Shown: one piece after another, positions 4,084 to 61,070 of the stretch
How the letters are laid out: each line of letters begins with the position of its first letter
Position numbering within the stretch: the stretch's first letter is position 1
Assembly (NCBI RefSeq): GCF_006345805.1
Contig: NC_043003.1
Location: 55,428,001-55,492,000 of the forward strand
Direction: 5' to 3'
Length of the DNA stretch: 64,000 bases
DNA from: Octopus sinensis
Taxonomy: Eukaryota
Notes under the pieces: generated by a model
Databases searched by the model: none
Told to the model about the DNA's origin: nothing
The model's input: only the letters and a program-made list of their open reading frames with translations
Position numbers and translations under genes: made by a program

Positions 4084-5448
4084 TCTTCTTTATATATCTA
4101 CTCCAAAAAGGATAAAAGGTAGAGTTGGCCTAAGCAAGATTTGAACGCAGTAGGTAGAGGGTTAAAGCAAGTAATATAAAGCATTCTGCCTGCTTGCCTA
4201 ATGACTGTCAATTAGCTGTCTATGAAAGCGGGAACACATTGTGTGCCATGTATCCTTCCATTTTATTTTAAAACTGTAGGGTGTCAAGTAAAGGAGATAG
4301 ATTATTTATGTGTGGAATCATTCAAATTACGTAGAAATTGGTTTAGAAATGCGGTGAAATATTTGCACGCCTGTTATTGCAGACTTGGGATTTGTCCATT
4401 TGTCCATTTCATGATTAATTTCATCAATGATTCAATATTAGATGTTAACTGTTAGAAATCCATTCTAATATACTCATTTACAGCCAGGATATTGCTACTA
4501 AAGTGACGAGATATTTATTAATTTTCCTTTCCATCATATTATATAATGGAACAGAAAAAGTTTCTAATTGAATTTTGAAAATTATTGTTGTTGTTTCTGC
4601 TCCAGTTGTTGCTTGTTGTCGTTGTTTTGTTTAGTCACAGGTCAGCCCTGATGAAGCAGGCCTAAGTCGAAACGATTTCTAACCTTGAAGGTACCTCATT
4701 TTTAGAAGAATTTAAGGCTACATTTATTTAGCGTTGCTTCCTACATATTTAAGAGTGAAAGTGCAGCAATTTGAGACGCATGCATTTATCTGTTAATTTT
4801 AAGAAGTTGTGCACCGTTTAAGGGCTTAAATGTGAAATAGATATTGAAGTGCAATATTGAGAAACAATTGAATTTTACATCACAGGCCGGTCAATATTTA
4901 AGTGCGCCGATGCTCAACACAGACTGGGCGACAATATCTGGGTTTTCAATGCATCAAACTTTCCATCTCGGCATTGTTGGTGGGGTCAGAAAGAATGCAC
5001 AACACTACGTTTGTTATTTATATGCTTGCAGGATTTATTGGAAGATTGTTGGGTAGGACACTGGATTACTTTGAGGGGTAACTTGAGGATTTACTATAAG
5101 GTTAACAGATTGCGTTCTTGTTAAATGGTGGTGAGGTTATTTAAGAACCTATAACTCTGGACATATGCAATAAGGTTCTTTATCATACCTGAAATAGTGA
5201 CTGAAGTCGCAATTCACTAATTACATAACTTTCAGGACAATATTGTACTTGTCACATTATACTGTATGTTGATATCAGGTAGGTTCGCCGTGGTCCAGAC
5301 TTAATTCATAGAGCATGCAAAAGATCAAAGACATTTAAATAAAGATAATGTGTTTTGCTTTTTCTGCAAATTTAATATTCTGAGTTTTAAAGGAAAAATG
5401 GGTGCTATGTGTAAAAGTTCATTTGAATATTAGCATGAATATTTCGCT

Positions 5449-8248: not shown

Positions 8249-9239
8249 TTGGACTATCTGAAACTATCATTTGTTCGCATGTTTCCTCTGTATTTTCACG
8301 AAATTCTGTTATGCATGTATCCTTGTATAATATATTTTTCCTTTATATCCTGTAGTGAGAGGCGATTATTTCTTCTATACTAACATGCTTGGAACACCAA
8401 TTATTATGAGAATTGTTTCTGTTTTCAATTCCCATAGTATAAACGAATATATTTCCAGCTCTTTATATTTATCTAATTTCCTGAGTTCGCCTAGATAGCT
8501 GTTATCGTCTATTGCGATTACAATATATATCAGGAGACGCTTTTTTTAATGTTTTTTTTTCTTTTCGCTTTGTCTCTAAGAATAATATCCAATCGATTAT
8601 TCTTACATTCTTTCTATTACTATGAATGGATAATTCTCTGAGTATGGTCACTTTTTAAGGTGTATTCTTATCTTTGTGAAGGTTTCACAATATCATTACT
8701 TCTTATTGTTTTTTATTTCTACACGCTTCTTACTATTATGGATATTTACAGAACATTGCTTTATACTAATCATACAGGAATGTCATAACTGATTGTGTTG
8801 TTACGAAGTCAGATTGCAGCAAATCTACTCTATAAAATACACACAAGCTAAGTAATCTCGCGTCACATTAAAGAGATATAACTGTTACCATTGAAACATA
8901 TTGGTATACGAAGAGTAGTGCTTTCATACCTGAACATATCATTCATGTTAAGTTGGAAACCTGTTCGCTTTAACTGGTCCTAGTTCGCTGGTGCGACTGA
9001 GATGGTTGGCTCTCGGCCTGGATATCAATCGTTCTACATCGGCCAGAGATACTTGATTCAATTTCATACCACATTCGATGGAGTGAGAAATATGACAGAC
9101 GTCACAGTTCTAGCCAATAGACATATACTGGGCCATAAAACTGATACATAGGCTTTCGACAAGAACTTTCAACATTTGATTATTAATATATGGATGAAGT
9201 TTATATTCCAGCAATTAATATCCGGGAACGCTACACATA

Positions 9240-10135
9240 CGAGGGGTTACCCAAAATAAACTGGGATTTTGTAATATTATTTTCTTCAAAAAGTTTTACA
9301 TGTTTACACTTTTATCGCCTTCAAAGTATCCTACATTTGTAGCAATGTATCGATCTAGCCGCATTTTCCTCAGTTCGAAGCAGTCCTATAACTTTTGCAA
9401 AATGATGCCTTTTAACGCTTCCGTCGTTTTCTTCTTGACCTCTTCCACATCTGTAAATTCCGCAGCACCAGCTTTCGTCGCCAGTGATGAACTTCGAAAA
9501 AAGGTCCAGATCAAATTCCAGCTGTATTTTTCAGTTCCCGACTCGCATTCAGTCGTGATTGCTTTTGATCTGCCGTGAACAAGCGGGGCACACATTTTGC
9601 TGTAACTCTTTTCATTCACAATTCCTCGCTAAAAATTCATTGACAGGAGCTCTAGGACACACCAGTCATATCAACAACTTTGTCAATAAATGTTTCGGTG
9701 ATGTTCTTTCAAGAACAGTTCATGAATTTTCATGAAGTTTTCTTTCGTTCGGATGGTTAACGTTCGCCCTGAACGAGGTTGGTTTTCAAGTGATAAGTAA
9801 ATATTTCTAAAGATTGAAAATCACTCGTAAACTTGTGTTTTGCTCATGACAGCGTTCTTGTAAGCTACTAGAAGCATGACAGCTGTTTCGTTTACCGTTT
9901 TCGCAGAAGAAAATAGAATTTCCTGGAGCATGCTGTTCTTTCGTTTCCGCCATCGCAAAAAAATAGACGAACAGGAGAGAAGCACTGTGAAAGAAAGACA
10001 CACCACTTGGCAGTACGACCACACTGAACGAAGCCTGTCAGCAGATGATGCCTGAGGTCGGCATCAAGTGGCTTCTAGCAGTTGAACAGGATTGTCCCAC
10101 AAAGAACGTTTCTTGTTACTTTTGGATATCCCACG
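9240..10135 (-). mobile_element. Internally deleted mariner (Mos1/SETMAR-like) with both TIRs and TA TSD
   Basis: TA(9238-39)+CGAGGGGTTACCCAAAATAAAC on the left; GTTACTTTTGGATATCCCACG+TA(10136-37) on the right. Minus translation MAETKEQ..KTVNET..TQVYE..PRSGR..VPRLFT..ITGDESWC joins directly to FTDVEEVKKKTTEALK..GYFEG, so most of the catalytic domain is deleted. Confidence 0.9.
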
Positions 10136-10537: not shown

Positions 10538-11250
10538 CCCTGTTGATATTAATTTTATTAAACATAATTCAATTAAGAGGATTCAAGCCATAACTCCCAA
10601 GAATTCCAATGTGTTATATCATTTCTATTTTTGAGATGGTAGACTGTAATTTGATGCAGTTTATTTGTTACTTTTGACCGTTCAAGCGACATTACTAGCT
10701 AAATAAATTAACTTTCGTTTCAAAAATTTCAATGAACTCTTTTTCTCTCTTTCCGTATATGATAACGTTATGAATTCGTAATTTTTTACAAGTTTCAATG
10801 GTATATTTTCTCAGCAACCACCGCCTACAAAATCTCAAGAATGGTAATATTTTAACAGGAATTGAGCTGAAAAAATAACATGAAAGATATTTAATTTTAT
10901 GTAAGTGAATAGGGAATTCCAAAATATTTGAAGACTTTTAGATGTAGTACCAGATTGTAATACATAAAAAAATATAAAGATTGGTTTATTTGTTGGATAC
11001 AATATAACTACGATACAAGTATACTCTGCGTTGTATTGTTTGTATCTAAAACGACATCCTATTCGTTTTACTCTTTAGTCGTCCGTATCATAATTATGAA
11101 CATAATTCCTCCGATTACGATAAGGCTTTGTGTACATAAATGTTTGATTAAAGTTATTGAAATATGTACCCACATATACGAGAAAATTCTGCAATCACTG
11201 TTAAAAGAGGATATATCGTCAAGCATAAATTTGTGCAAGTCCATGTATAT

Positions 11251-13346
11251 TAGAGTGGCCCTTAGCAATAGGTAATTTTTTGAAGGTTACAATTTTGCTG
11301 CTCCCACCCATTAATCTTGTTCCAATAAACAAAATAACGAGGTGTGCAAAATTTCATCTTACTCCAACTATTAGGCGGGCTCAAACGCCTTGAGGTTGGA
11401 ACATAGTATACGCAAGGATTAATTCTTTTCATAAGCGGTCTACGGACCCCTTCTCCACCATTTTCTTTTTTCTTCTTAAAGAAATTTACGTAGACACATC
11501 CAGGCAACCCCAACAGATGTTTAAAAGTTTTCTGAACCAAATTTACCAAAAGGTGATTTTAAAAATTCCTGAAATAAGATGAAAAACTTAAGAAATATTA
11601 GGTTTTTATTAATAAAGCGCACAATTTCTATAAAAGAAACGTATTTTTATTTACGACAATACTTTCTGTTGAATCAAAAACAAGGATTTAGTGGCGGCTG
11701 GGTAAGTTTTACTGTTTTCGGTAACGATCTGTAAAACAAATTGTTTATCACTTTCATCTTTTGTGAGGATGTTATTGTAATCATGAACGAATTTGACACC
11801 TCTTTCTGCAACATCATTCGCAACAACTGTCTTCTCAACTTTTTTAAGTCCACTTTTGTAACTACGATCATACTTCCATGTTGAAGAAAATCTCGTGAAG
11901 AAAGTTTTTGTACCAGGATTTACAAAAGATGAAAACTCGATGTTTGTAAAGGAAGAAAAGACATTTCAATCTCATCAATTGATTTTTTCTCCTTCATCTC
12001 TTTGCTCTCCTTCACCTTTGTCTGCTTCCAACATAACTTAAGTAATATTTGCCATCACCTGTGTTGGAGCAGATATTCTTCTTAAGTAGTCCTTCTCCTC
12101 AGGAGATAACTGAATTTGAAATTGAAACAGGTATATCTTGAATGCGTGAATTGCGTTTGAAATCTACCCAGCATGACATTCAGCTCCTAGTGTATGAAAT
12201 GAGATTCCGTTCATCCAAATGCCATCAAGAAAGATCATCGTTAACTCCAACAATATTCGGTAACCATTTCTCTGTTGTTTCTGCGTAGAAAGGTGATATT
12301 CAAGAAATCCACGAATAGTAGACCAGACATCATCAGGCACTTCATTGCTATTAGTTATGTAAACATTCTGCTTCACTCGACCTGTGTTGCTTGCTGTTGT
12401 AACATAGCAACGTGCCTTAATTTTGTCGGTTATACCCCACTTCTCCACAGCTTGGTAAACAGCCATGGCTGGCTGTTCTCCTGAAGATATTGGAATTTCA
12501 TGAACTCCCAACAATTACTCTTTGCCTTGAAAAATTACTATTATTGCCAGTCTATCAACCTTTTCAACGCCTGTCAGTACTTGGAGCAGTTTTCTATCCC
12601 AGTGCAACTGTAATTCTTGACACTCATTTAGGTTTAATTTGTGCTGTATTTCTGTGAATCTCACTTCTCTAAATTTTCTTCTAAGGCATTGATAATATGT
12701 ATACAAAACAGAAAACATTATAAAAACGGAGATTTTATAAAAGTGGTATTACAAATTTGTCAGGGCTACCAACACAACAGGGGAAATTGTATATCAATAT
12801 GCGCCAGAACAAAATAAATGAGTATTACAAATAAATTAACAAATAAATTACAAATAAATTAACATATATTTAAAAACACGGACAAGTCATATTAGTTCAC
12901 TGTTTATCACTAACGTATATTTCTTAATATTATATTTCTCAACACTACGGGTCCTTACAATGTACGAACGCAACTGACAAACTTACTTGCTCGCGTCTGG
13001 CCGCCAACTTGATGACGGCGAAAAATACGTGTTTGTCCTATACCTACGCACTGTCTCCAGCTTTGTAAGTTGTTTTCCCCATTATATTTATCGTCACTTA
13101 TCCTTCTACTAGCAAGAATAAATCTGAATAAGTTTCTAATTTAAGACCAATTAAATAGTAGAAAAACTTTTTATCTGAAAAGATGGCTGACCTGGCGAAA
13201 ACTTCAAAATTTCATCGTCGATGAGTGTCGCCTTGCAGGTGTTTGATTGAGCTAAAATTTTGCATAGATAGCTTTCTATTAATAGGAACAAGATAGTGAG
13301 GGTGAGAGCTAAACTTTTAGAAAGTTGAATTATAAGGGCCACCCTA
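11251..13346 (-). mobile_element. hATm-like DNA transposon, internally deleted, with TIRs and 8-bp TSD
   Basis: TIRs TAGAGTGGCCCTTA (11251-11264) and TAAGGGCCACCCTA (13333-13346), 13/14 match. Flanks ATGTATAT (11243-50) and ATGTGTAT (13347-54), 7/8 match. Minus translation has LHWDRKLL..VDRL..LLGVHEI..TTASNTG, YRILLELTMIFL..LGAECHA and VANDVAERGVKFVHDYNNILTKDE. The hATm label is recalled, not database-checked. Confidence 0.85.
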
Positions 13347-23658: not shown

Positions 23659-23879
23659 AAGGCGAGCTGGCAGAAACGTTAGCACGCCGGGCGAAATACG
23701 TAGCCGTATTTCGTCTGTCGTTACGTTGTGAGTTCAAATTCTGCCGAGGTAGACTTTGCCTTTCATCCTTTCGGGGTCGATAAATAAAGTACCAGTTACG
23801 CACTCGGGTCGATGTAATCGACTTAATCCGTTTGTCTGTCCCCTTCTATGTTTAACCTCTTCTGTGCAATAAAGAAATA
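23659..23879 (+). mobile_element. Nin/Deu-type SINE, full length, LINE-like tail
   Basis: GGCGAGCTGGCAGAAACG (A-box-like), GAGTTCAAATTC (B-box-like), CCTTTCATCCTTTCGGGGTCGATAAA core, tail ..GCAATAAAGAAATA. Confidence 0.92.
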
Positions 23880-27252: not shown

Positions 27253-27324
27253 AGGTTCTACTGAGATATGAACTCGGATCAGGGGATTCAGAGTCCAGAG
27301 TGCTAACCATTACACCATAGAACC
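27253..27324 (-). tRNA. tRNA-Gln(CTG)-like sequence, probable pseudogene
   Basis: GGTTCTATGGTGTAATGGTTAGCACTCTGGACTCTGAATCCCCTGATCCGAGTTCATATCTCAGTAGAACCT (72 nt). Acceptor stem and D arm intact; two mispairs in the anticodon stem, one in the T stem; no oligo-T terminator. Confidence 0.85.
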
Positions 27325-27734
27325 AGGGCAACCTTGCAGATGTAAGTGCAAGATTACAAATTTCTAGGGAGCGTTGAGCCGATGATGTCGACTTCAGTAA
27401 CTGACTCGTACTTTATGTTATTAACCCAGAAAGAATGAAAAGAAAAACTGACTTTGTCAGATTTTGAACTTAGTACATAAGAGTCGGAGAAGGCATTTAG
27501 TCCGATGGATCTACGAATCGACATATCAACCAACCTTATATGTGTGATTCTGTTCATTATTATGATTATATTTTCTTTTCTTGTGAGTAAGAAATTTTGT
27601 TTGACCAATGGTTCGTATTTGTTATTCGTCACTACCAATTTTGTTATAACGGATTATGTTTGGCGTTGTTTCGGAAGAACTGCGGCTGGGATTGAAAAAT
27701 TGAAAAAGAAAAGCAAATTAACAATATTGAAAAG

Positions 27735-34027: not shown

Positions 34028-34255
34028 AGGCGGCGAGTTGGCTGAAACGTTAGCACACCGGGGAAAATTCTTAGCGGCATTTCGCCTGCTTTTACGTCCT
34101 GAGTTCAAATACCACCGAAGAATACTTTGTCATTCATCCCTTCTGTGGTCGATGAAATGAGTACCAGTTGAGTGTTAGCGTCGTTAAAATCGACTACTCT
34201 CCGCACCACCAAACAATTAATAAAATGGCCAGGCCTTGTGTCACTAATGGAAACG
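34028..34255 (+). mobile_element. Nin/Deu-type SINE, older tail variant
   Basis: AGGCGGCGAGTTGGCTGAAACGTTAGC..GAGTTCAAATACC..GGCCAGGCCTTGTG. Confidence 0.8.
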
Positions 34256-34322
34256 ATTAACTAGCTTGCAGAGCAGTTCGGTTTGTTGTTGCTGGTGATG
34301 GTGGCGACGATATGATTAAGAC

Positions 34323-34555
34323 GGTGACCTGGCAGAAACGTTAACACGCCGGTCCAAATGCCTAGCGGTATTTCATCTGCCGTTACGTTGTGAGTTCAAA
34401 TTCCGTCGAGGTCGACTTTGCCTTTCATCCTTTCGGGGTCGATAAATTAAGTACCAGTTACGCACTGGAGTCGATGTAATCGACTTAATACCTATGTCTG
34501 TCCTTGTTTGTCCTCTCTGTGTTTAGCCCCTTGTGAGTAATAAAGAAATAGGTAT
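34323..34555 (+). mobile_element. Nin/Deu-type SINE, LINE-like tail followed by GGTAT
   Basis: Full head and core; tail TGTTTAGCCCCTTGTGAGTAATAAAGAAATA ends at 34550, then GGTAT. Confidence 0.92.
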
Positions 34556-39240: not shown

Positions 39241-40689
39241 TAACTTAGAATAACTTAGAAAGGTTTTTGGCCAGTATTGGCCCAGGCCATGTCTAACTTA
39301 ATAGCACCACCTGGCGAAGTCTTTCAGTTCAGGATTTGGGCACCAAGGCCCATTCGAGCAGAGAGTTATTGTTTGCGGAGACATATCCGGGTGTGGGTGG
39401 TTGTCCGGTACTGTTTGAAGGAATTTGTCCAAAGACTTCTTGAATTTTGTGTGGTCAGTTTCTTTTTTGACGTGTCCTGGTGTAATGTTGAAGAGAGCGG
39501 GTCCAATTGAGGTGAAATAGTTGTGCCGTATTGTCGTTATGTGATGCGATTTAGTTTGTTGTGGACGGATGGCACGTGGTCCAAGCCTTGGATGCATTTT
39601 GAAGGTGATGCCAACATCATTCGGACAGTGCTGATGGAATATTTTCCACATCATACAGATAATGTAGCGTTCACGGCGTCGTTGGAGTGAATACAATTTC
39701 AGCTTCTCTAGTTACCCCAGAGTAGTCAAGGTCTGACATGCCATCTATCTTTTTTGTGATTGACCTTTGGGGAGCTTCAATTCTCATAATATTTTGTTGT
39801 GTAGGGAGGACCACAGTGGACAGCAGTATTCAAGGTGGGGTCGGGCAAAGTGGAGAAGAGAAGGATAATAGCGTGGGAATCTCTCGACTGGAAGGTTCTG
39901 AGAATCCAGGAACACATTTCGCGGGCCATGTCAACTTTGCTGCTTATATGTGTAGCCCAGCTTATGTTGTTGTCCACTGTTACTCCCAGGTCTCTGATGT
40001 GTTGGATGCCATGAGAATTTCTCCAGAAGGAAGAGAGTATGGGAGTTTCAGAGCGTCCTCCCTTCCAAAGTGGATCAGTTCGAATTTGTCTTCATTTAGC
40101 AACATGTTATTCTTTTCCGCCCATTGGACAACAGCCAGTAGGTCTGACTGAAGTTTTATTCGGTCATCCACGCCATTGATGACCTTCTGGAGCTTGGAAT
40201 CATCAGCGAAGGTTCTGATGTTGCTGTGTTTGATGGTGTGTCCAGTAATATCATTTATGTAGATGATGAAGAGAAGTGGGCCCACACAGTGCGTGGATGC
40301 TGGGCCACTGCTGACTTTGGCTGGGCTGGATTTGACTCCTCGACTACAACATGTTGGGTTCTGTTAGAGAGGAAGCACTCGATCCATTGCAGCAGCTTTC
40401 CAGTGACACCAATATTGGACAGCTTTCTCAGAAGGATCTTATGATCAACCCTGTCAAAGGCCTTGCTGAAATCAAGGTAGATGACATCAGTGTTGGAACC
40501 CTCTCCCAAGGCTCTCAAAATGTCATCAAAATGATGCAGTAGCTGCGTCAGGCAATCTCTCCCATTACGGAATCCATGCTGGTTGGGGTTCAGCATATTA
40601 TGACTCTCAAGGAAGTGAGTCATACGCGATCTCAGCACCCTCTCAAATACCTTGATGATATGAGAGGTGAGTGAGATTGGACGGTAATT

Positions 40690-50807: not shown

Positions 50808-51322
50808 GATTTCAGATTTTGGCACAAGGCCAGCAATTTCGGAGGTGGGGATAACTCGATCACTCGTCAATCGCATTATTCAACTGGTACTTATTTCATA
50901 AGCCTCCGAAAGGATGAAATGTAAAGTCGACCATGGCGAAATTTTAACTCAGAGCGTAAAGACGGACGAGATGGCGCTAAGCCCGGTGTGCCAGGCCGCT
51001 CAGCTTATTGTCTGTTGTGTCAGGCAGCTCAGCTTTATGCCCGGCGTGACACACCACTCAGCTTTTTGCCCGGCGTGCCAGGTCGCTCAGCTTTTTGCCC
51101 GCCGTGCCAGTCCGATCAGCTTATTGATCGGCATGCCAGACCACTCAGGTTTATGCCCGGCACGCCAGGCCGCTAAGCTTTTTGTCTGTCGTTCTAGGCC
51201 ACTTAGGTTTATACCCGGCGTGCAAAACCACTCAGCTTATTGCCTGGCACTCCAGGTCTATCAGCATATTGCCCGGAGTGCCAGTTCGCTCAGCATTTAA
51301 CCCGGCGTGCCAGCTCGCCGCC
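50808..51322 (-). mobile_element. Nin/Deu-type SINE whose head contains a 29-bp minisatellite
   Basis: Tail and core at 50808-50975; head start CAGCTCGCCGCC ends at 51322; array lies between them. Confidence 0.85.
50998..51316 (+). repeat. 29-bp minisatellite, 11 units, consensus ~GCTCAGCTTTTTGCCCGGCGTGCCAGGCC
   Basis: Counted 11 consecutive 29-bp units (319 bp) plus a partial unit from ~50976; no spacers. Confidence 0.92.
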
Positions 51323-51929: not shown

Positions 51930-52380
51930 TCGGCGACAGCAATAAATGTATCATCATCATCACCAGCAGCAGCAGCAGCAACAGCGTCATCACCATTGTT
52001 GTCATCGTCGTCATCATCATCATCATCGACATCATCGTCTTCCTATTCATCATCATTGTCTTCATCATCTTCATCATCTTCATCATTATCATCGTCATCG
52101 TCATCAGCAGTCATCGTTGTCATCAGTATTGCTGTGATTGTCATCATCATCATCATTGTCGTCGTCGTCGTATTCATCGTCATCGTCATCATCGTCATCA
52201 TCATCATTATCATCGGCATCATCATCATCATTATCAAGTCATCATCATCGTAACCATAATCATGTCGTCATCATCGTCATCATCATCATTGTCGTTGTCA
52301 TCATCATCGTCATCATTACCATTGTCGTCATCGTCATCGTCGTCATCAACATCATCATCATCAACATTGTTACCATCAAC
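51930..52380 (+). repeat. Degenerate (CAT)/(CGT) trinucleotide block
   Basis: Source of the poly-H/S/I ORFs. Confidence 0.9.
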
Positions 52381-52818
52381 CTTTGCAAAGGTAACTATTT
52401 CGCTCCTCTAATAACAGCATAATTCCTGCCAACACTAAACCGAGATCAAATTCACAGACAGTCCTACCGTAACCACCACCACAATCAGCACGGATCAAAT
52501 CAACCACACGAACAAGACAAATAATACTAACACAAGGGAAGGATCTTCTATGTGGCCACTTGACCTGTCAGAAATATTGACCAAATACTCTCAAAGTATG
52601 CTTCACTGTTTTGGGGACAAAATGCGTTGGGTACTGTGTTTTGAGGTTCCGGGAACATAGGAATTTTCGGTAGGGTCACGACTGGGTCAACTGTGAACAT
52701 AAGGGTACTAGTCTAAGTATAACTTGGAGCTGAACAGCGAAAAGGACGACTGGAATAATAATTCTTGCTAGGTTTATTTACGCTACATTGCCTCCTATGT
52801 TAATATCACCCCGAGGTT

Positions 52819-53530
52819 AGGCGGCAAGCTGGCGGAATCGTTAGCACCCGGGAGAAATGCTTAAAGGTATTTCGTCTGCTGTTACGTTCTGAGTTCAAAT
52901 TCCGCCGATGTCGACTTTGCCTTTCATGCTTTTGGGGTCGATAAATTAAGTTCCAGTTACACACTGGGGTAGATGTAATTTACTTAATCCGTTTGTCTGT
53001 CCTTGTTTATCCTCTCCGTGTTTAGCCCCTTGTGGGTAGTAAAGAAATAGATATTTCGACTGTCTTTATGTTCTGAGTTCAAATTCCGCCGAAGCCGTCT
53101 TTGATGTGTGGGCGTTAAGGCGGCGAGCTCTCAGAAATGTCAGCAGGGCGGGCGAAATTCTTAAGGGTATTTCGTCTGCTGTTACGTTCTGAGTTCAAAT
53201 TCCGCTGAGGTCGACTTTGCCTTTCATACTCTGGGGATCGATAAGTTAAGTAACAGTTACACACTGGGGTCGATGTAATCGACTTAATCCGTTTGTCTGT
53301 ACTTGTTTGTCCCCTCTGGGTGTAGCTCCTAGTGAGCAGTAAAGAAATAAGAACCGTTAGCATGCCGGGCGAAATGCTGAGCACTATTTAGTCTGTCTTT
53401 ATGTTCTGAGTTCAGATTCCGCCGAGATCGGCTTTGCCTTCATCCTTTCGGGGTCGATGAATTAAGTACCAATTTCATACTGGGGTAGATCTAATCAACT
53501 GGCCCCCTCCCCCAAAATTTCGGGTCTCGT
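52819..53530 (+). mobile_element. Nested/tandem cluster of Nin/Deu-type SINEs
   Basis: LINE-tail copy 52819-53049 followed by GATATTTCGACTGTC...; LINE-tail copy 53118-53349 followed by AGAACCGTTAGC... of an older-tail copy. Confidence 0.9.
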
Positions 53531-53832
53531 GCCAAGACTCGAACAGAGTATCACCCCGAGATGACTCACATGATTCCAGTATTAGAATAATACTCCCAAC
53601 TGATATCGCCTTTAATTTGTAGAAGTGACATGAGTACCGGTAATATACTAGATGTATTATCTCAATGCCATAGAAACTGTATAAGAACTGCTTACCTTAT
53701 AACCCATTTTGATGTAAAGATACGTACATACATAGATACGCAGTTAAAATCCAACGTAGACGTGCATACTCACATACACACACACAAGCACACATATACG
53801 CACATGTATATTGCAATAGCTATGTTGAAATG

Positions 53833-54250
53833 TAGCGAGCCAACAGATTCGTTAGCGCGCCGGGCAAAATGCTTACAGGCATTTCGTCCGTATTTACGGT
53901 CTGGGTTCAGGTGCCACCAAGGTCACCTTTATCGCTCATTCTTTCGGAATTGATAAATTAAATAACAGTCAATTATTGGAGTCGGTATAATCGGGCTAGT
54001 CCCTTGCTCCCAAATTTCAGGTTGTGTGCACTTGGTAGAAAAGATTATGTAAACTGGTTTAAAGGTGGCGGGTTAGCAAGATCGTCAGCGCTCCATATTG
54101 TATGCTTAGCTGCATTTCATCCAATTTTATATCCTGAGTTCAAGTCCCACTTGTCTTTCATTCTTTCGGGATTGATGAAATAAAAGTATCAACCACGTAC
54201 CGCAGAAGATCGATATAATCGGATAGAGACCCGCCTCTAAATTTGCTGCT
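53833..54250 (+). mobile_element. Two degraded older-tail Nin/Deu-type SINEs
   Basis: Heads at ~53833 and ~54062, each with core TTCATTCTTTCGG.ATTGAT.AAAT. Confidence 0.7.
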
Positions 54251-54254
54251 TTCT

Positions 54255-54804
54255 TATTTCTTTATTGCCCACAAGGGGCTAAATATAGAGGGGACAAACA
54301 AGGACAGGCAATGGGATGAAGTCGATTACAGCGACTCCAGTGCGTAACTGGTACTTATTTTATCGACCTCGAAAAGATGAAAGGCAAAGTCAACCTCGGC
54401 GGAATTTGAACTCACAACGTAACGGCAGACGAAATATCTATTTCTTTACTACCCACAAAAGGCTAAACACAGAGAAGGCAAACAAGGACAGACAAACGGA
54501 TGAAGTCGATTATATCGACCCCAGTGCGTAGCTGGTACTTATTTAACCGACCCCGAAAGGATGAAAAGCAAAGTCGACCTCGGCGGAATTTGAACTCAGA
54601 ACGTAACGGCAGACTAAATACCTATTTCTTTATTACCCACAAGGGGCTAAACACAGAGGGACAAACAAGGACAGACATAGGTATTAAGTCGATTATATCG
54701 ACCCCAGTGCGTAACTGGTACTTAATTTATCGACCCCGAAAGGATGAAAGGCAAAGTCGACCTCGGCGGAATTTGAACTCACAACGTAACGCAGACTAAA
54801 TACC
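54255..54804 (-). mobile_element. Three tandem headless SINE units, each starting at the target motif G(G/A)TATTT(A/C)GTCTGC
   Basis: Units 54804-54623, 54622-54439 and 54438-54255 (~182-184 bp each), every one ending in A(A/G)TAAAGAAATA. Confidence 0.92.
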
Positions 54805-55059
54805 AATCTTTATTGCCCACCGGGGGCCAAACATAGATATGGACAGTACAACTGATGGGATCAGTGAATCGATATGATTTTACATAAATGTGACATCAAA
54901 AATAAAATACAATACATAAAAATCGAATGGAATACACAGTACAAAAACAATACAAATGAAGCGATGATCAAGTTACGCTCCGATCCCACAAGCCCCGATC
55001 TACCGCTGATACCTTTTTATTTTTCCTTTTTTTTTTTTTTTTTTTTTTTCCTCGTCTAT

Positions 55060-58000
55060 TCACACGGTTCCTTGCACGCACAACACTCGTGCAACATACT
55101 TCCATCTCTTTTGGAACGTACACTCTGACAGACACCTCTTCTCCAGCCACAGTTTCCTTTTCAAATGAAAAGAAAAAAAGGATCGTAAATTGTCACCAGA
55201 GATAAAGTTGCCTGTCTTAATTCCTTTTATCCTAGTATTCCATACAGCCTCTTTTGCTATTGCTACAACCGTGAGAAAACAATTCTTACCTTCGTTCGTT
55301 AGAACTCCCGGTGGGTCAATTTTTATAATTGACTCAGTCGACAGCCGTACTCTTCCTTCGCCGGACAACAGATGTTCAGCATAAGCCCACATTTCAGTTA
55401 TCTCCGAACACTGAACAATAGCGTGAGGGACAGTTTCCCTGTCCCCACCGCATCTTGGACAGGTCGGCGACTGATGTTTACCATGTCTTGCGAGCTTATC
55501 CCAAACGGGCAAGGCACCTCTGTAGCATTGCCAGGTTAAGGACTTTTGGAAGTTGTCCAACGTTCTCAACCCGAATGTACGATGAAACAAGCTGTCCAGT
55601 TGAATAAATCCGAGACCTAGAGTCGACCCCAGGCCATCGTCGCATTCAGACTCTACCAACCCACTATATAAAATCCGTGTGGAACCCCCACCGCTGGCGT
55701 TGCCCGAGCGCCGGAACAGCAAGAGGGCCTTACGGCACTCTTTATGCCACTCACTCGACCTCGGTCTACGAGAACACCAGGCTTCCTGTTCGCAAAAACT
55801 CTTGAACTCAGGGAACATTTGTCTGGCCAGCGGAGACCACACCCGTTCACTATCCAGGAGAATCCAGAGGTGCCTCAAACTCAACGCATGTCTGCGCATC
55901 ATTAACCAAGGCATCCCTAAACCTCCATTTAAAGGCTTTTGACAGCAGACAGAGCGTTTCACAAGTGGCGACCTGCCCTTCCACAAAAAGCGAAAGAGCT
56001 GTCTCTCCAACCTGATCAACCACGAATCCGGACAGGGCACGACAGTCAGGCGGTAGGTAATGACCGATGCGATAAACACATTGGCCACTTCCGCCCTCCC
56101 TTTCAAGGATAGCCACCGCCAAGACCAAGTCTTGACTACTGCAGCCACCCTGCTCAATACCTCCGTCCAGTTCTTCTCTATCTGGAGGCCTGGTCCAAAC
56201 CAGACTCCCAGCAACTTAACCGGTCCCTCCGTCCAGCGCCTAACAACACTGTCTGAAGGCATCGACTTGCCAACCCAGGTGCCGAGCTGCAAGCCGACCG
56301 ACTTTTCCCGGTTAATCTTTGCTCCTGCTACCTCCTCGTAAGCCTCAATAGTCTTACCTACTTCACGTAGGCGTACCACTGTGGTTACACTGATAGTGAT
56401 ATCATCCGCGAAAGCCGTAACAAACTCCTCTAGTCCTGGTTCTCTCGGGATGTCACTCAACCTTTGCAGTAATGGCTCGAGAGCCATCACATACAAAAGT
56501 GGTGAAAGCGGACATCCTTGACGAACCGAGCGTCTGATGCAGAACGGCTTCGAAAGGAAACCGTTCACCCGAACTATCGAGTCAATGTTGTGGTACAAAG
56601 CGATAAACCACCTGAGGAAGCCAAGGCCCAGGCCAAACCGCGCAAGTACAGTCGCTAGGTATCGATGGTCAACCCTATCAAAAGCTTTAGACTGGTCCAA
56701 ATGCACCAATGCCCCACCTTTGCCAGATTTATTACCAAGCCTCTCTATGGTATATAGCGAATAAGATGGAGGGTATCCTGAATGGTTCTGCCTGGGATGG
56801 CACATGTCTGTGCCTCCCCGACTATACCATTCGCGACACGCGCCAACCTTTTTGCTAGAACCTTGGCCAAAATCTTCACTTCTGCGTTTAACAGAGTGAT
56901 GGGCCTGAAATTCTCTAGAACGTCCCCCTTGTCCGGGTCCTTTCTGACCAACGTCACTACTCCCCGGCGCACAGATCTGGGGATAAACCCATTCTGTTTC
57001 CAGTTCGCGTACACGTCAGTCAGTAGTTGCCCGAACAAGTCTGGCATACATTTATACAGCTCGTACGGAAGACCATCAAGTCCCGGTGACTTACCCGCTT
57101 TACAATCGGCCAAAGCCTCCATCACCTCCTCAAGTGTGATTGGCCCTTCGCAAGACTCCGCATCCGACCCCGAGAGGCACGGCAGCCCGGTAAGAAAGTC
57201 CTCGAGGGCTCTCCCACCACCAGGACCGCCGTCACCCCCGAACAGCTGGGCGAAGTACTCCCGAAAGACCTCACACATTTTCTCGGGTTCGTTTATCAAG
57301 ACACCATTTTGATTCGTCAAAGACCGAATAGAGGAACTATTTCCTTGCCGAGCTTCCACCACTCGGGCCCATCCAGCGGCTTTGATTCCTTCACTTCCCA
57401 TTGCACGTAACTTAGCTCTGGTAATACTTCCCATGTGGTGGGCTTCAAGATGCTGGTTTAACTCCAGTCTTTTCACCCTCGCTTGGTCTGTATTACCAGT
57501 CCTCCAGGCTTCTTCTAGTTCCTTAACTAGACCATCTCCTATTTTACGTCCCTTCTTAGCTAAACTTATGCTAAACCTAATAGACTCATATTTGATGGCT
57601 CTTTTTAGGGCGTACCACCATTTGTTATTAATGATGGTACCTGTTAATGCCCTCTGTATTAACATCTTGATCCGCTTTCTGTACTCCTCAATCGCCAAAA
57701 GGGACGTATTGAGTTTCCAGTAGCCAGATCCCTGTCTATGCAACTTATCTACCGTCAGTTTACAGGAACCATCTTGTGGTCACTGTAGCTGACTAGAAAA
57801 AACTGTGGACACTCAACTATGGACTTATCTTTTTCTCTAATTAAAATCCTATCTAGATATGTTCTGGTAGACCCGTCACTATTTGACCACGTCCACTGTG
57901 GAGTGTTCGGGTGCTCCAACCTATATGGATCTGCTAGCTGAAATTGACTTAGCAGATCCCGAAAGCCTGTGTTACATTTTCTGTTCATGTTCGAGTTTGA

Positions 58001-58459
58001 GCCAACACAATCTGTGTGTGCTGCACATATTGTATTAGAGTCTCCTAACACTACTAGTGAATGCGACGTGGCTAGGAACTTTCCTAGGCCACGAAAATAT
58101 TCAGTTTGCGGGCCAATAATGTTTGGTGCATAAATAGCGACCAGCCTGATTGTCTTGCCACAACTGAATGTCAAGTCGAGAACGACCAGCCTGCCTTCTG
58201 GGTCAAAAAACCAACTTTTTCTCGGCTACCCGGTTTCTTTTTAGTAGGACCAACACCCCACCCCCACCTCCCGCCCGACTCGGAAACAGAAACGTTTCTC
58301 GTAGCCGTTCAGGAGGGGGAGCAGATCTCTTGGCCCCTTCCGGGTTTCCGTTGCAACAATTACATCCAAATTTCTCGACCTGATGTCATTCAGAAAGCGT
58401 CCTTGCTTCCAGCTTGACAACAGGCCATGAACATTTAAACAACCAATGTGAATAGCCAT
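55060..58459 (-). pseudogene. LINE ORF2: APE endonuclease, reverse transcriptase, C-terminal CCHC (frameshifted as assembled)
   Basis: MAIHIGCLNVHGL..DVIVATET, IYAPN..LGDSN..TW..YLDR..SDH, GYWKLN, KSPGLDGLP, NFRPITLLN, LDQSKAFDRVDH, VRQGCPLSPLLY, FADD and CPRCGGDRETVPHAIVQC, spread over ORFs 58241-58462, 57755-58174, 56745-57743 and 55060-56805. Confidence 0.95.
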
Positions 58460-59990
58460 CACTTACCTGTTTAATTAGGATTGTCCGGTGGAGGGGGACC
58501 CTCCACCTTTTTTTATCCAGGGTCGGAGGTGGACGGTCTTGGGAAATAGATTTGTCAAAATCCCGTCTCACCACCGACACAGAATTATCAGGTGGAGGGG
58601 GAATCTCCACCTTTTCCTTTTCTCGCGGGATCGGAGCTGGTAATCCATGAAATATCGACTTGTTAAAATCTAATCTCAATGAAGATACAGTCTTTCTGTA
58701 CTTATTTTGTAGAATTCTATAAGTCTTATTTGAGACTTCATATATGTCGTAATTGATAAATTCCTCTGAAAGGTTATCAATTTTTTTACAGTCTTTATGA
58801 GTTGAATGTCTCTCATGAGCTCAGTATCTTTAGTGTATACGGCTATTATGCCTTTTTCTTCTTTTTCTCTTCTGGCAGTCTTTTTGGTCGTTGTTCTGTA
58901 GTAGTCGCCGCTCTCGGCTGGGTTGCTGGTTGTATTTTTCTTTTGTTTGTTGTTTTTTCTCATCTGTTTCTTCTTTATCTTCTTCCTCTTTGTCTTTTTT
59001 CTCCTCTTCCTCCTTCATTTCCTTGCAGTTCCTTCGAATGTGGCCTAATTGACCACATAAAAAAACATCGAGGTTTTCGGCCCTCAACAAACACCACGAG
59101 GTTCTCCTCCCCTACCTCAATTGTCTCAGGAATTGTTTGAATTATTTTAGGGTCCGCTTGAATGAGAAGATTAATTGTTTTACCATCCCAGCGTGGGTTT
59201 TCCGTAGCGGTAGCCTGGAGGAGAGTAATTTTTCTACCTCTTTGATTAGGACTGCCGCCAACAACCACATAGGTTCGACCTCTGGCGGGACCCTTGTAAT
59301 TTTTATTCGCGACGTCCTCATCCCCATATAATAGGGTATTAACTCCACGTCGTTCGTTTTCAACGTTTCCACTGAGTTCTTGTGTGCTATTTCTTTATTG
59401 GTGAACCTTACTTCCACCGTTCCGAATTTTTTTCCTCTTCTCAGAAATACTACGTCGCCCAATATTGGCTTTAAGTACTTTTCTATTTTCTCTTCTGACA
59501 TTCTTTCAATTTTTCTATTTTGTAGACAATATGTTTTGAAAATTATTGTTTTTTGCTTTTCTTCCTGTAATAACTTTTGCGGAGGTTCAATTTTCACACT
59601 GTTGTCATTTATTTCCATCATTTTGCTGTATTTCATAATTTCGCTTTTATTCGTCGACAGTATCTGGGTTCCACCCCCAGCAGCCAACGCAAAACTTTTT
59701 TTTCCATTTTTTGGTTCTATCTGGATGCTAGGCACATCAATTATTCTCTTCGACACAATGCCTTTGTTCTCTGGCAAAGTCGGGAACTCTTCTGGTGAAA
59801 GTTCTGACGAGCTCTCAGACACATCTCCAAAAATATCAAATATATTATCCTCTCTGCTATTCCTTCTTGTAGCGGGGGAAACCCCTATTTCCTTGTCTGT
59901 AGTTGGCTCCTCGCCGGACATGTATTTCCTCCTCTCAACAGGAGAAACAAGTATTTCTGCTCCAACGGTAGGCTCCATGCTAGACGACAT
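58440..59990 (-). pseudogene. LINE ORF1: gag-like nucleic-acid-binding protein with CCHC zinc knuckle (frameshifted as assembled)
   Basis: ATG at 59990 (MSSSMEP); ORFs 59142-60035, 58975-59268, 58830-59090 and 58676-58963; knuckle CFLCGQLGHIRRNC. 3' end uncertain. Confidence 0.85.
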
Positions 59991-60154
59991 TCTTCCCCCA
60001 AAGGGGGAATGAACAACGCGTGCTACCACAAGCACTAAGTGTTTTCAATTGAAAACTCCAACAGTTAAGTTATTCAACAGTTTAACAAGAACAACAGTTG
60101 TTAACAATATTAACACCACGAAACAGCAATTCTTACTTCACGAACACATGTGCG

Positions 60155-60197
60155 GCAGACTAAATACCGCTAAGCATTTCGTCTGCCAGCTTGCCGC
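60155..60197 (-). mobile_element. 5' part of the host SINE head
   Basis: GCGGCAAGCTGGCAGA-CGAAATGCTTAGCGGTATTTAGTCTGC, i.e. the family head with an internal ~17-bp deletion. Confidence 0.88.
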
Positions 60198-60865
60198 GTT
60201 GACAAATATATATAACTGTTAGACCGATCCAAAATCCTAGAAAATGGGGGGGGGGGTTTGTAAAATTTAATACATGAAAGTTTATAAATAAATGTGTGTG
60301 TGTGTGTGTGCGTGTGTGTGTTTGTTTGTGTAAAACCGACAAGAAGAAAATGTTAACAATGCAGACAACTGTCGAATGTGACAAAGAAAATATAGCACTA
60401 ATACAAAATTATCATGAAGTCATAAAAATGCTATATTGTTATTCCATTATGAAATAAATGTAAAATGATATACTGGATGTATTCTTTTATATTCGACTAA
60501 AGAAAAAAAAATGCATTTTTATTGTATTTATTTTGTTTATTCATTTTAAAATTGGACCTATTATGGGGACATTTGATCGCTCATTCTTTTTATTGTGTTG
60601 CTTTTCCTCCATTCGGGTCGATAAAATAAAGTATCTGTCAAGTACTGGGATCCTTGGTGTGGTACTTATTTATCTAAAATTTTCTGTTCTTGTACTTTAA
60701 TTAAAAGCAACAGCCTTTCAAAATTACTGCTTGTTATAACTTTAATATTTAATTGCATTTGATTTTTTATTTACTTGTCTTAATTGTTGAAGTGCGGCCT
60801 TGAAGGCAGAGCGATTCGACACCAGTAATTAAATCTATCTATCTCTCTCTCTCTATATATATATA

Positions 60866-61070
60866 ACGGGAAGCTTTATGAAAATAAACAAAAGACGAAG
60901 GCAGGTGGAATACAAACAAACAATTGTATTAGTATGGTGCTCAGGAATATAAATAAAACAAGTCTTTTACGTTTCGAGCCTACGCTCTTCAACAGAAAGA
61001 TACACAGAAAAGAAACACGGAGAGAAACAAGGAGAGAAAAAAAATGCGTGCAGAAGCTAGCGAATCAAAA
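60866..61070 (-). mobile_element. PLE-terminus-like repeat carrying a minimal hammerhead-like motif (60963-61000)
   Basis: Minus strand TCTTT-CTGTTGA-A-GAGC-GTAG-GCTC-GAAAC-GT-A-AAAGA: stems I and II pair perfectly, but core A6 is U. Confidence 0.65.

What the first reader, a model, noticed from the sequence alone, without database searches (positions are those of the whole stretch)
54805..54855. LINE 3' end matches the SINE 3' tail: a partner pair with a feedback loop
Seen: LINE end TGTCCATATCTATGTTTGGCCCCCGGTGGGCAATAAAGA vs SINE tail TGTCC-TCTCTGTGTTTAGCCCCTTGTGGGTAATAAAGA, about 32/39 by hand alignment, with no SINE body upstream in the LINE. Older-type SINE copies have a different tail (GGCCTTGTGCC). 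The LINE's A-run at ~55020-55050 is internal, not terminal. Known: stringent LINE/SINE pairs share 3' tails (e.g. eel UnaL2/UnaSINE1). Inference: one SINE subfamily captured this Tx1 tail, so the LINE mobilises the SINE that also supplies its target.
Basis: partly seen in the sequence, partly recalled or inferred. Interest (0 to 1): 0.85.

Follow-up and report, generated by a model that had tools for sequence, protein, structure and literature searches.

The report
Octopod LINE and SINE share tail
A decayed L1/Tx1-type LINE in this octopus-like genome ends in the same roughly 45-base hairpin tail as the abundant local SINEs, and related LINEs in other octopods do too, so this LINE family is probably what copies those SINEs: a new example of a well-known LINE/SINE partnership.

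Summary
The minus-strand LINE (60152→54805) ends in TGTCCATATCTATGTTTGGCCCCCGGTGGGCAATAAAGA. This matches the tail of the younger SINE subfamily at 32/39, and the similarity extends over 44-66 nt, above every shuffle.

The tail belongs to the LINE. A 15/16-nt target-site duplication (GGTATTTAGTCTGCCG) brackets the whole element, with no SINE body inside it. LINE relatives at 54-61% protein identity carry the same tail at the end of their 3' UTRs. The Argonauta hians relative has its own 17-nt duplication, and Argonauta SINE tails match its tail at 38/42.

A 4-bp stem with a 5-nt loop is kept through compensatory changes.

- The older SINE tail is not unrelated. It matches the 3' end of a sister LINE lineage.
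- This LINE copy has a variant loop (CCGGT, not CTTGT) and is decayed, so the partnership holds at family level.

The "feedback loop" is only partly supported. The LINE and three SINE units sit at one site inside SINEs, but the sample is small and relatives landed in AT-rich non-SINE DNA.

This is a new member of a known kind.

The parts
54805..60152 (-). Near full-length but decayed L1/Tx1-type LINE, 5348 bp: 5' UTR, ORF1, ORF2 (endonuclease, reverse transcriptase, zf-RVT), 3' UTR and tail
   Evidence: Pfam hits: RVT_1 8.6e-21, zf-RVT 9e-08, Exo_endo_phos 2.7e-4. tblastn maps ORF2 in three frames. The read-through has 2 frameshifts and 2 stop codons. The element is bounded by the target-site duplication.
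54805..54849 (-). LINE 3' tail shared with SINEs (the finding): TTGTACTGTCCATATCTATGTTTGGCCCCCGGTGGGCAATAAAGA+TT
   Evidence: Local alignments to seven SINE copies all end at the LINE terminus. Score 26 for U3, against shuffles of 10.6 +/- 1.7 with maximum 20. 32/39 identities.
54815..54827 (-). Predicted tail hairpin: stem GCCC/GGGC, loop CCGGT
   Evidence: Present in the minimum-free-energy fold. Compensatory changes occur across LINE and SINE lineages.
60153..60168 (-). 5' copy of the target-site duplication, GGTATTTAGTCTGCCG, which is about position 50 of the disrupted SINE
54790..54804 (-). 3' copy of the target-site duplication, GGTATTTAGTCTGC-G (15 of 16)
   Evidence: Joining the two flanks restores a continuous SINE.
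60153..60200 (-). Head (promoter part) of the SINE that the LINE split, carrying a 17-nt internal deletion
   Evidence: compared with intact heads.
54255..54804 (-). Three head-less SINE body+tail units of 184 bp each: U1 54621-54804, U2 54438-54622, U3 54255-54436. Each begins at the same position-50 motif.
   Evidence: Tandem Repeats Finder reports 3.2 copies at 87% matches. Identity to dispersed copy 34318-34552: U1 95.7%, U2 88.6%, U3 90.7%. U1 is 89.6% identical to a 201-nt query centred on U2 and overlapping its neighbours.
55014..55049 (-). Internal A-run in the LINE 3' UTR, starting 10 nt after the ORF2 stop codon
   Evidence: Relatives have a purine-rich stretch at the same place.
55060..58462 (-). 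ORF2, broken by frameshifts near 57758 and 56751-56760 and by two stop codons in the endonuclease domain
58830..60035 (-). ORF1 region, frameshifted; a CCHC zinc knuckle lies in ORF 58830-59090
   Evidence: zf-CCHC E = 6.5e-4 at 20.1 bits, just under the 20.8 cut-off.
34318..34552 (+). Intact dispersed younger-type SINE with tail ...TGTTTAGCCCCTTGTGAGTAATAAAGAAATAGG, flanked by a 7-nt duplication TATGATT
52819..53103 (+). Younger-type SINE followed directly by a partial SINE unit that starts at the same position-50 motif: an independent tail-to-motif junction at 53050/53051
53117..53540 (+). Younger-type SINE (53117-53349) joined directly to an older-type SINE that starts at about its position 17
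23661..23879 (+). Younger-type SINE lying in a (TA)n microsatellite
34028..34262 (+). Example of the older-type SINE, tail ...GGCCAGGCCTTGTGTCACTAATGGAAACGATTA

Best explanation
This is a LINE/SINE partner pair of the stringent, tail-recognising kind.

**What is there.** An L1/Tx1-type LINE family of octopods ends in a specific terminal module of about 45-70 nt rather than in poly(A). The module is a T/G-rich run, then a 4-bp G+C stem with a 5-nt loop (usually CTTGT), then AATAAAGAAAT. The abundant tRNA-type SINEs of the same genomes carry this module at their 3' ends.

**How it most likely works (inferred, not shown).** The LINE's ORF2 protein recognises the module on the RNA and starts target-primed reverse transcription there. 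It can therefore copy SINE RNA as well as its own.

**Scope.** The window's copy is an old, broken member. It has 2 frameshifts and 2 stop codons in ORF2, and a variant loop. The pairing therefore holds for the family and not necessarily for this copy. The older SINE subfamily carries the tail of a sister LINE lineage, so SINE subfamilies have changed partners within one LINE clade.

**Secondary, weaker inference (my estimate about 0.35).** The machinery prefers a TATTT-containing site at about position 50 of the SINE. SINE cDNA that enters there is joined at its 5' side through homology with the target. That would produce the head-less 184-bp tandem units.
For: **Shown**
- The tail match is real: score 26 against shuffles of 10.6 +/- 1.7 with maximum 20, and 32/39 identities.
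- The tail lies inside the LINE insert. A 16-nt duplication brackets 60152-54805, and the joined flanks give a continuous SINE.
- The LINE contains no SINE body.
- Relatives at 54-61% protein identity end their 3' UTRs with the same module. These are Argonauta hians L001 in two UTR copies, L003 and L006. The UTRs align from the stop codon to the tail.
- The Argonauta element is 5765 bp. A 17-nt duplication, TATTTTTAAAATTTGTA, places the tail at its exact 3' terminus.
- Argonauta SINE tails match the Argonauta LINE tail at 36-38/42, with about 70 nt of homology. The score is 36-39. Shuffles, run for the copy scoring 36, gave 12.8 +/- 2.1 with maximum 28.
- The second stem pair is C-G in the window LINE and SINE, and G-C in the Argonauta LINE and SINE and in L003.
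- Hairpin on in-register tails: 98% of cells paired against 66 +/- 5 shuffled (0/500), and 17-46% when slid. RNAalifold predicts the same 4 pairs, 3 of them with compensatory changes.
- The older SINE tail matches the L011 LINE 3' end at 27/31: score 22 against 9.5 +/- 1.4.
- The elements do not end in A-runs.

**For the target site**
- Of 10 position-50 motif copies in the window, 4 are preceded by an element tail and 1 is followed by the LINE 5' end.
- SINEs cover only 5.8% of the window.
- U1 is closer to a copy 20 kb away (95.7%) than to the query centred on its neighbour U2 (89.6%).
Against: - No second copy of this exact LINE family could be obtained. There is none in the window, and no relative above 61% identity in the protein collection.
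- The window LINE's loop is CCGGT, not CTTGT. Its tail is no closer to the local SINE tail (32/39) than the Argonauta LINE tail is (32/40).
- The stem is only 4 bp. The tails are not more stable than shuffled sequences in 4 of 5 cases (z = +0.39, -0.75, -1.32, -2.32, +0.13).
- RNAalifold found no structure on the raw 17-tail alignment. The unselected count is modest: 87.5% against 79.5 +/- 3.2, with 5/500 shuffles reaching it.
- In alignment A3, I chose by eye the frames of the distant LINEs and three of the older SINE copies.
- Trans-mobilisation was not tested.
- For the target site: the Argonauta LINE and L003 have clear tails that abut non-SINE DNA, AT-rich sequence and (ATT)n respectively. 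L006's weaker tail match is followed by a CA-rich stretch. The four window junctions come from only two loci.
Confidence: 0.8

Rival explanations
1. Leftover SINE tail. The LINE really ends upstream, for instance at the A-run. The 39 nt would then be a fragment of the neighbouring SINE array, or of a SINE the LINE landed beside.
For: The tail sits directly against a SINE tandem array, and Tandem Repeats Finder extends the array to 54837. Only one copy of this LINE is available. The A-run looks like a poly(A) end.
Against: The 16-nt duplication brackets the LINE together with the tail, and no motif copy lies between the A-run and the tail. There is no SINE body upstream. Four other LINE 3' UTRs from three lineages end with the same module and have no SINE nearby. 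One of them is fixed by a 17-nt duplication.
Confidence: 0.04
2. Capture in the reverse direction. The module arose in SINEs and the LINE picked it up by recombination or template switching, so it says nothing about how the LINE recognises RNA.
For: Template switching between LINE and SINE RNAs is known in principle. The window LINE's 3' UTR is unlike its relatives' UTRs apart from the tail.
Against: The hairpin and A/T-rich terminus occur at the 3' ends of LINE lineages down to 35-39% protein identity (L007, L009, L010, L011). No SINE of the window's type was found in any of those loci. A conserved terminus across such divergence points to a LINE function.
Confidence: 0.06
3. True partner pair, but no target feedback. 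The tandem SINE units arose by unequal crossing-over or replication slippage, and the LINE landed in a SINE by chance at an ordinary TATTT site.
For: SINE-derived tandem arrays are common. The window has 496 TATTT sites, so AT-rich targets are everywhere. LINE relatives landed in non-SINE AT-rich or microsatellite DNA. Only two loci support the site preference.
Against: The LINE junction coincides to the nucleotide with the unit junctions. Position-50 motifs are only about 2% of TATTT sites. An independent junction of the same kind lies at 53050/53051. U1 resembles a distant copy (95.7%) more than the query centred on its neighbour (89.6%). The unit junctions carry the SINE-type end GAAATAG, not the LINE-type GATT, so they were not made by crossing-over at the LINE tail.
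Confidence: 0.5

Closest known systems
Stringent LINE/SINE pairs with a common 3' tail, e.g. eel UnaL2/UnaSINE1 (Kajikawa and Okada 2002, as cited in PMC4494074); 58 such pairs surveyed in PMC3747384
   Same: The SINE 3' end is homologous to the LINE 3' end at the very terminus. There is a short stem-loop with a conserved loop and variable, compensated stems. The elements have no poly(A) end.
   Different: UnaL2 belongs to the L2 clade, whereas this LINE is L1/Tx1-type. Mobilisation of the eel pair was shown by experiment; here it is inferred from sequence alone.
Stringent monocot L1 lineage with maize and sorghum SINE partners (Ohshima 2012, PMC3472496; review PMC3747384, section 4.3)
   Same: It is an L1-superfamily LINE that, unlike mammalian L1, keeps a specific 3' hairpin shared with SINEs, supported by compensatory stem changes.
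   Different: The host is a plant and the hairpin sequence differs (loop UCU, flank CGAG). No insertion into the partner SINE was reported.
Crocodilian Tx1-Mar LINEs and SINEU (Kojima 2015, PMC4494074)
   Same: A Tx1-type LINE is inferred to mobilise SINEs. The LINE and the SINE land in the same repeat, and copies are often flanked by other SINE or LINE copies.
   Different: There the link rests on a shared target (a Mariner transposon) and shared snRNA-derived heads. Here it rests on a shared 3' tail, and the suspected target is the SINE itself.
Octopus tRNA-derived SINEs OK, OR1 and OR2 (Ohshima and Okada 1994, as cited in PMC4758252 and PMC4824008); octopus tRNA-Core and tRNA-Deu SINEs (PMC8967140)
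   Same: The window's SINEs are probably of this kind: abundant, octopod, with a tRNA-type head and a conserved central part.
   Different: I had no reference sequences, so identity with OR1 or OR2 was not tested. The papers I could search name no partner LINE for them.

Membership tests
Stringent-type LINE/SINE partner pair (shared 3' tail) | The SINE 3' end is homologous to the LINE 3' end, above chance | tested here: met
   Window: score 26 against shuffles of 10.6 +/- 1.7 with maximum 20. Argonauta: 36-39 against 12.8 +/- 2.1 with maximum 28.
Stringent-type LINE/SINE partner pair (shared 3' tail) | The homology lies at the true 3' terminus of both elements | tested here: met
   16-nt duplication around the window LINE. 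17-nt duplication around the Argonauta LINE. 7-nt duplication around SINE 34318-34552.
Stringent-type LINE/SINE partner pair (shared 3' tail) | The tail is present in LINE copies generally, not in one copy only | tested here: met
   Found in L001 (two UTR copies), L003 and L006, which are relatives at 54-61% identity. Not testable for the window's own subfamily, because no second copy was found.
Stringent-type LINE/SINE partner pair (shared 3' tail) | A conserved stem-loop supported by compensatory changes | tested here: inconclusive
   In-register set: 98% paired against 66 +/- 5, with 3 of 4 pairs showing double changes. The unselected alignment gives only 87.5% against 79.5. RNAalifold finds nothing on it. 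Fold energies are not unusual. The stem is 4 bp.
Stringent-type LINE/SINE partner pair (shared 3' tail) | LINE and SINE tails change together between host lineages | tested here: met
   Argonauta SINE against Argonauta LINE: 36-38/42. Against the window LINE: 29-30/38. The second stem pair is C-G in the window pair and G-C in the Argonauta pair. For the window species the preference is marginal: 32/39 against 32/40.
Stringent-type LINE/SINE partner pair (shared 3' tail) | The LINE protein mobilises the SINE RNA through the tail | not testable with these tools
   This needs a retrotransposition assay.
Tx1 clade of the L1 superfamily | ORF2 with an apurinic-type endonuclease, a reverse transcriptase and a C-terminal zinc-binding domain | tested here: met
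   Exo_endo_phos, RVT_1 and zf-RVT hits. The best solved structure is human LINE-1 ORF2p at 1.3e-64.
Tx1 clade of the L1 superfamily | The reverse transcriptase groups with Tx1 reference elements and not with other L1 lineages | not tested
   No reference set was on hand. The only lead is that one of the few named homologues (P0198) is called 'transposon TX1 uncharacterized 149 kDa protein [Danio rerio]', at 29% identity and E = 2.9e-80.
Tx1 clade of the L1 superfamily | ORF1 with a CCHC zinc knuckle | tested here: inconclusive
   zf-CCHC E = 6.5e-4 at 20.1 bits, under the 20.8 cut-off, in a shifted frame. The main ORF1 has no Pfam hit.
Tx1 clade of the L1 superfamily | Insertion into a specific repeated target | tested here: inconclusive
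   The window LINE is at SINE position 50, where SINE units also sit. The Argonauta relative is in AT-rich unique DNA, L003 abuts (ATT)n, and L006's weaker tail match abuts a CA-rich stretch.
tRNA-derived CORE-type SINE (octopus OR-like) | A tRNA-related head with Pol III A and B boxes | tested here: inconclusive
   A B-box-like GAGTTCAAATTCC is visible. ARAGORN calls no tRNA in any SINE head, and Rfam gives no match in 52000-61000.
tRNA-derived CORE-type SINE (octopus OR-like) | A CORE central domain | not tested
   No SINE library was available. The literature says tRNA-Core and tRNA-Deu SINEs dominate in octopus (PMC8967140).

The most novel reading that the evidence does not exclude
The octopod L1/Tx1-type LINE uses its own partner SINE as a preferred landing site, at the TATTT motif near SINE position 50. 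SINE cDNA that enters there is joined through homology with the target, so each hit adds a head-less SINE unit and a fresh copy of the target. This would be a self-reinforcing process. It builds SINE tandem arrays and could help explain why SINEs make up about a tenth of octopus genomes.
Probability: 0.3. Interest if true: 0.7.

Novelty: new member of a known kind. Interest (0 to 1): 0.48.

Why it matters
SINEs make up about 11-12% of the Octopus vulgaris genome, and L1-Tx1 is among its recently active LINE groups (PMC13282606). None of the papers I could search names the LINE that moves octopus SINEs.

A shared, co-varying 3' tail with a small hairpin gives a concrete candidate partner. It also gives a directly testable recognition element: tail and hairpin mutants, with compensatory rescue.

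It adds an animal example of a tail-specific ("stringent") member of the L1 superfamily, whose mammalian members recognise only poly(A).

If the SINE site preference holds genome-wide, it would also explain the SINE tandem arrays in octopus genomes.

Tried and rejected
**Searches for more copies of the window's own LINE family**
- BLAST of the LINE against the window returned only the LINE itself.
- Two protein searches found no relative above 61% identity.
- A protein-pattern scan and an exact 22-mer scan of the LINE tail of metagenome contigs found nothing.
- A protein-pattern scan of bacterial and archaeal genome contigs found nothing.
- P0005 is not on record.
- The L002 and L005 contigs stop before the tail. 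L004 ends 6 nt after its gene, so it cannot hold one.
- The source species could not be identified. It is inferred to be an octopod only from the Argonauta hit and the SINE type.

**Structure tests that gave little**
- RNAalifold on the raw 17-tail alignment gave no structure. This alignment mixes decayed copies and has a misplaced gap inside the stem.
- Fold energies of single tails are not better than shuffles, except for one Argonauta SINE.

**Other negatives**
- Rfam and ARAGORN recognise nothing in the SINEs or the tail.
- A fuzzy-regex scan timed out.
- Literature searches found no description of an octopus SINE/LINE partner. The Albertin 2015 genome paper is not held.

**Explanations rejected**
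- The tail as a SINE leftover: the duplications and the relatives exclude it.
- The array made by crossing-over between the LINE tail and a SINE tail: the unit junctions carry the SINE-type end GAAATAG, not the LINE-type GATT.

Full report
**What is at the coordinates.** The window is AT-rich animal DNA (33-50% G+C in 2-kb windows, mostly 33-45%). It is full of short tRNA-type SINEs.

On the minus strand, 60152→54805 is a 5.3-kb LINE:
- ORF1 lies at 59142-60035, with a CCHC knuckle in a shifted frame.
- ORF2 lies at 58462-55060 and has endonuclease, reverse-transcriptase and zf-RVT domains.
- Mapping with relatives shows two frameshifts and two stop codons in ORF2. The copy is therefore old and dead.
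- The best solved-structure match is human LINE-1 ORF2p at 1.3e-64.
- One of the few named homologues is a zebrafish protein called 'transposon TX1 149 kDa protein', at 29% identity.

I call the element L1/Tx1-type. Strict Tx1 membership was not tested.

The quoted LINE end is at 54845-54807 on the minus strand. Local alignments of the last 300 nt of the LINE against seven SINE copies all end at the LINE terminus. They cover its last 44-66 nt and score 14-26. For the top-scoring copy (26), 1000 shuffles gave 10.6 +/- 1.7 with a maximum of 20. No SINE body lies upstream within the LINE.

**The tail belongs to the LINE.**
- Upstream of the LINE 5' end is a SINE head ending in GGTATTTAGTCTGCCG (60168-60153).
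- Directly after the tail (plus TT) the same 16-mer recurs with one base missing (54804-54790). The rest of the SINE then continues.
- Joining the flanks restores a continuous SINE.
- The LINE, including the tail, is therefore one insert bracketed by a target-site duplication.
- The A-run at 55014-55049 is internal. It lies 10 nt after the stop codon, with no duplication copy next to it.

**Other LINE lineages have the same tail.** No second copy of this family could be found. Relatives at 54-61% protein identity were found:
- **Argonauta hians (L001):** ends in ...TCTGTGTCGGCCCTTGTGGCTAATAAAGAAATC. A 17-nt duplication, TATTTTTAAAATTTGTA, brackets a 5765-bp element and fixes that tail as the true terminus.
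- **L003:** ends in ...GGGCCCTTGTGGCCAATAAAAGAAATC, followed by (ATT)n.
- **L006:** ends in ...CTCTTGTGGCCAAT.
- Their 3' UTRs align from the stop codon to the tail.
- **L007, L009, L010 and L011 (35-39% identity):** carry a similar 4-bp hairpin with a 5-nt loop near their 3' ends.

**LINE and SINE tails change together.** SINEs in the Argonauta locus end in TCTGTGTTCGGCCCTTGTGGCTAATAGAGAAATCTAT. This matches the Argonauta LINE tail at 36-38/42, with about 70 nt of homology. The score is 36-39. Shuffles, run for the copy scoring 36, gave 12.8 +/- 2.1. The second stem pair is G-C in the Argonauta LINE and SINE, and C-G in the window LINE and SINE.

**The hairpin.**
- On in-register tails, the 4-bp stem is paired in 98% of cells, against 66 +/- 5 in shuffles (0/500) and 17-46% when slid. 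Three pairs show double changes.
- RNAalifold predicts the same stem.
- Caveat: I picked by eye the frames of the distant LINEs and three older SINE copies.
- On the unselected alignment the signal is modest: 87.5% against 79.5 +/- 3.2.
- RNAalifold finds nothing on that alignment.
- Fold energies are ordinary.
- I therefore treat the hairpin as probable, not proven.

**The older SINE subfamily.** Its tail has the consensus CCCCTCCCCCAAAATTTCGGGCCTTGTGCCAAAATTTGAAA. It carries the same hairpin core. It matches the 3' end of the L011 LINE at 27/31, with score 22 against 9.5 +/- 1.4 and a maximum of 14. Both SINE subfamilies thus carry tails from one LINE clade. The difference between them is a switch of partner lineage.

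**Limits on this particular copy.** The window LINE has loop CCGGT, where the SINEs and other LINE lineages have CTTGT. Its tail is no closer to the local SINE tail (32/39) than the Argonauta LINE tail is (32/40). The true driver of the local SINEs is probably a sister subfamily.

**The "feedback loop".**

*In favour:*
- The three 184-bp units after the LINE each begin at the same position-50 motif.
- An independent junction of the same kind lies at 53050/53051.
- Of 10 motif copies in the window, 4 are preceded by an element tail and 1 is followed by the LINE 5' end.
- SINEs cover only 5.8% of the window, and these motifs are about 2% of the 496 TATTT sites.
- U1 is 95.7% identical to a copy 20 kb away but 89.6% to the query centred on its neighbour U2. 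This argues for separate insertions.
- The three motif copies around the LINE and U1 share a minority A variant, as expected from target duplication.
- The head-less units fit target-primed reverse transcription of SINE RNA into a SINE, with the 5' junction resolved by homology. This step is inferred.

*Against:*
- There are only two loci.
- The relatives landed in AT-rich or microsatellite DNA.
- A general preference for TATTT-like sites may be the whole story.

I put the real SINE-site preference at about 0.3-0.4.

**Comparison and novelty.** Shared LINE/SINE tails with small compensated hairpins are a textbook mechanism (PMC3747384; PMC4176376). A stringent L1 lineage with SINE partners is known in monocots (PMC3472496), and Tx1 LINEs are thought to move crocodilian SINEU (PMC4494074).

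Octopus papers list abundant SINEs and active L1-Tx1 families but name no partner (PMC13282606, PMC8967140, PMC9115989).

This is a new member of a known kind. It is useful for octopus genome biology and moderately interesting in general.

Noticed in passing
window 50981-51313 (minus strand), inside the SINE at about 50826-51320: An older-type SINE has part of its head (CTGGCACGCCGGGCAAAAAGCTGAGCGGC) expanded into a 29-bp minisatellite of about 11.5 copies. The rest of the SINE follows normally.
   Followed up: partly
window 27253-27324 (minus strand): The only tRNA gene that ARAGORN calls in the window is a tRNA-Gln (CTG). It lies directly after a truncated older-type SINE fragment (about 27374-27480).
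   Followed up: no
L007 / L008 (ENA ERZ25071366 ctg14421c): A distant LINE relative (38% identity) occurs as head-to-tail tandem full-length copies with a 6484-bp period (ORF2 starts at 5001 and 11485). This suggests the element inserts into itself or into an array.
   Followed up: no
L001 8011-8660 (Argonauta hians): The Argonauta LINE carries two 3' UTR copies, each ending in a tail-like module (8256-8290 degenerate; 8612-8650). They are about 135 nt apart, and both lie inside one 17-nt target-site duplication.
   Followed up: partly
L001 9618-11314 (Argonauta hians): Argonauta SINEs also sit head-to-tail (10830-11062, then 11063-11312). The second SINE's tail is followed by a sequence resembling a SINE start (ATCAGCAC...), and a separate tail-bearing fragment ending near 9890 lies about 20 nt upstream of a SINE start. 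This hints that SINE-next-to-SINE insertion is general in octopods.
   Followed up: no
window 54063-54254 (+) next to 54255-54436 (-): The last unit of the SINE array abuts, tail to tail, the 3' end of an older-type SINE on the opposite strand.
   Followed up: no
window 53117-53540: A younger-type SINE is joined directly to an older-type SINE that starts at about its position 17. This fits insertion into a SINE head with a homology-resolved 5' junction.
   Followed up: partly
window 40384-40683 (minus strand): A weak reverse-transcriptase-like fragment (31% identity to LINE ORF2 residues 520-618, E = 1e-7) marks another, unrelated retroelement remnant.
   Followed up: no
window 51950-52367: A long (ATC)n microsatellite of about 138 copies lies between two SINE clusters.
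   Followed up: no
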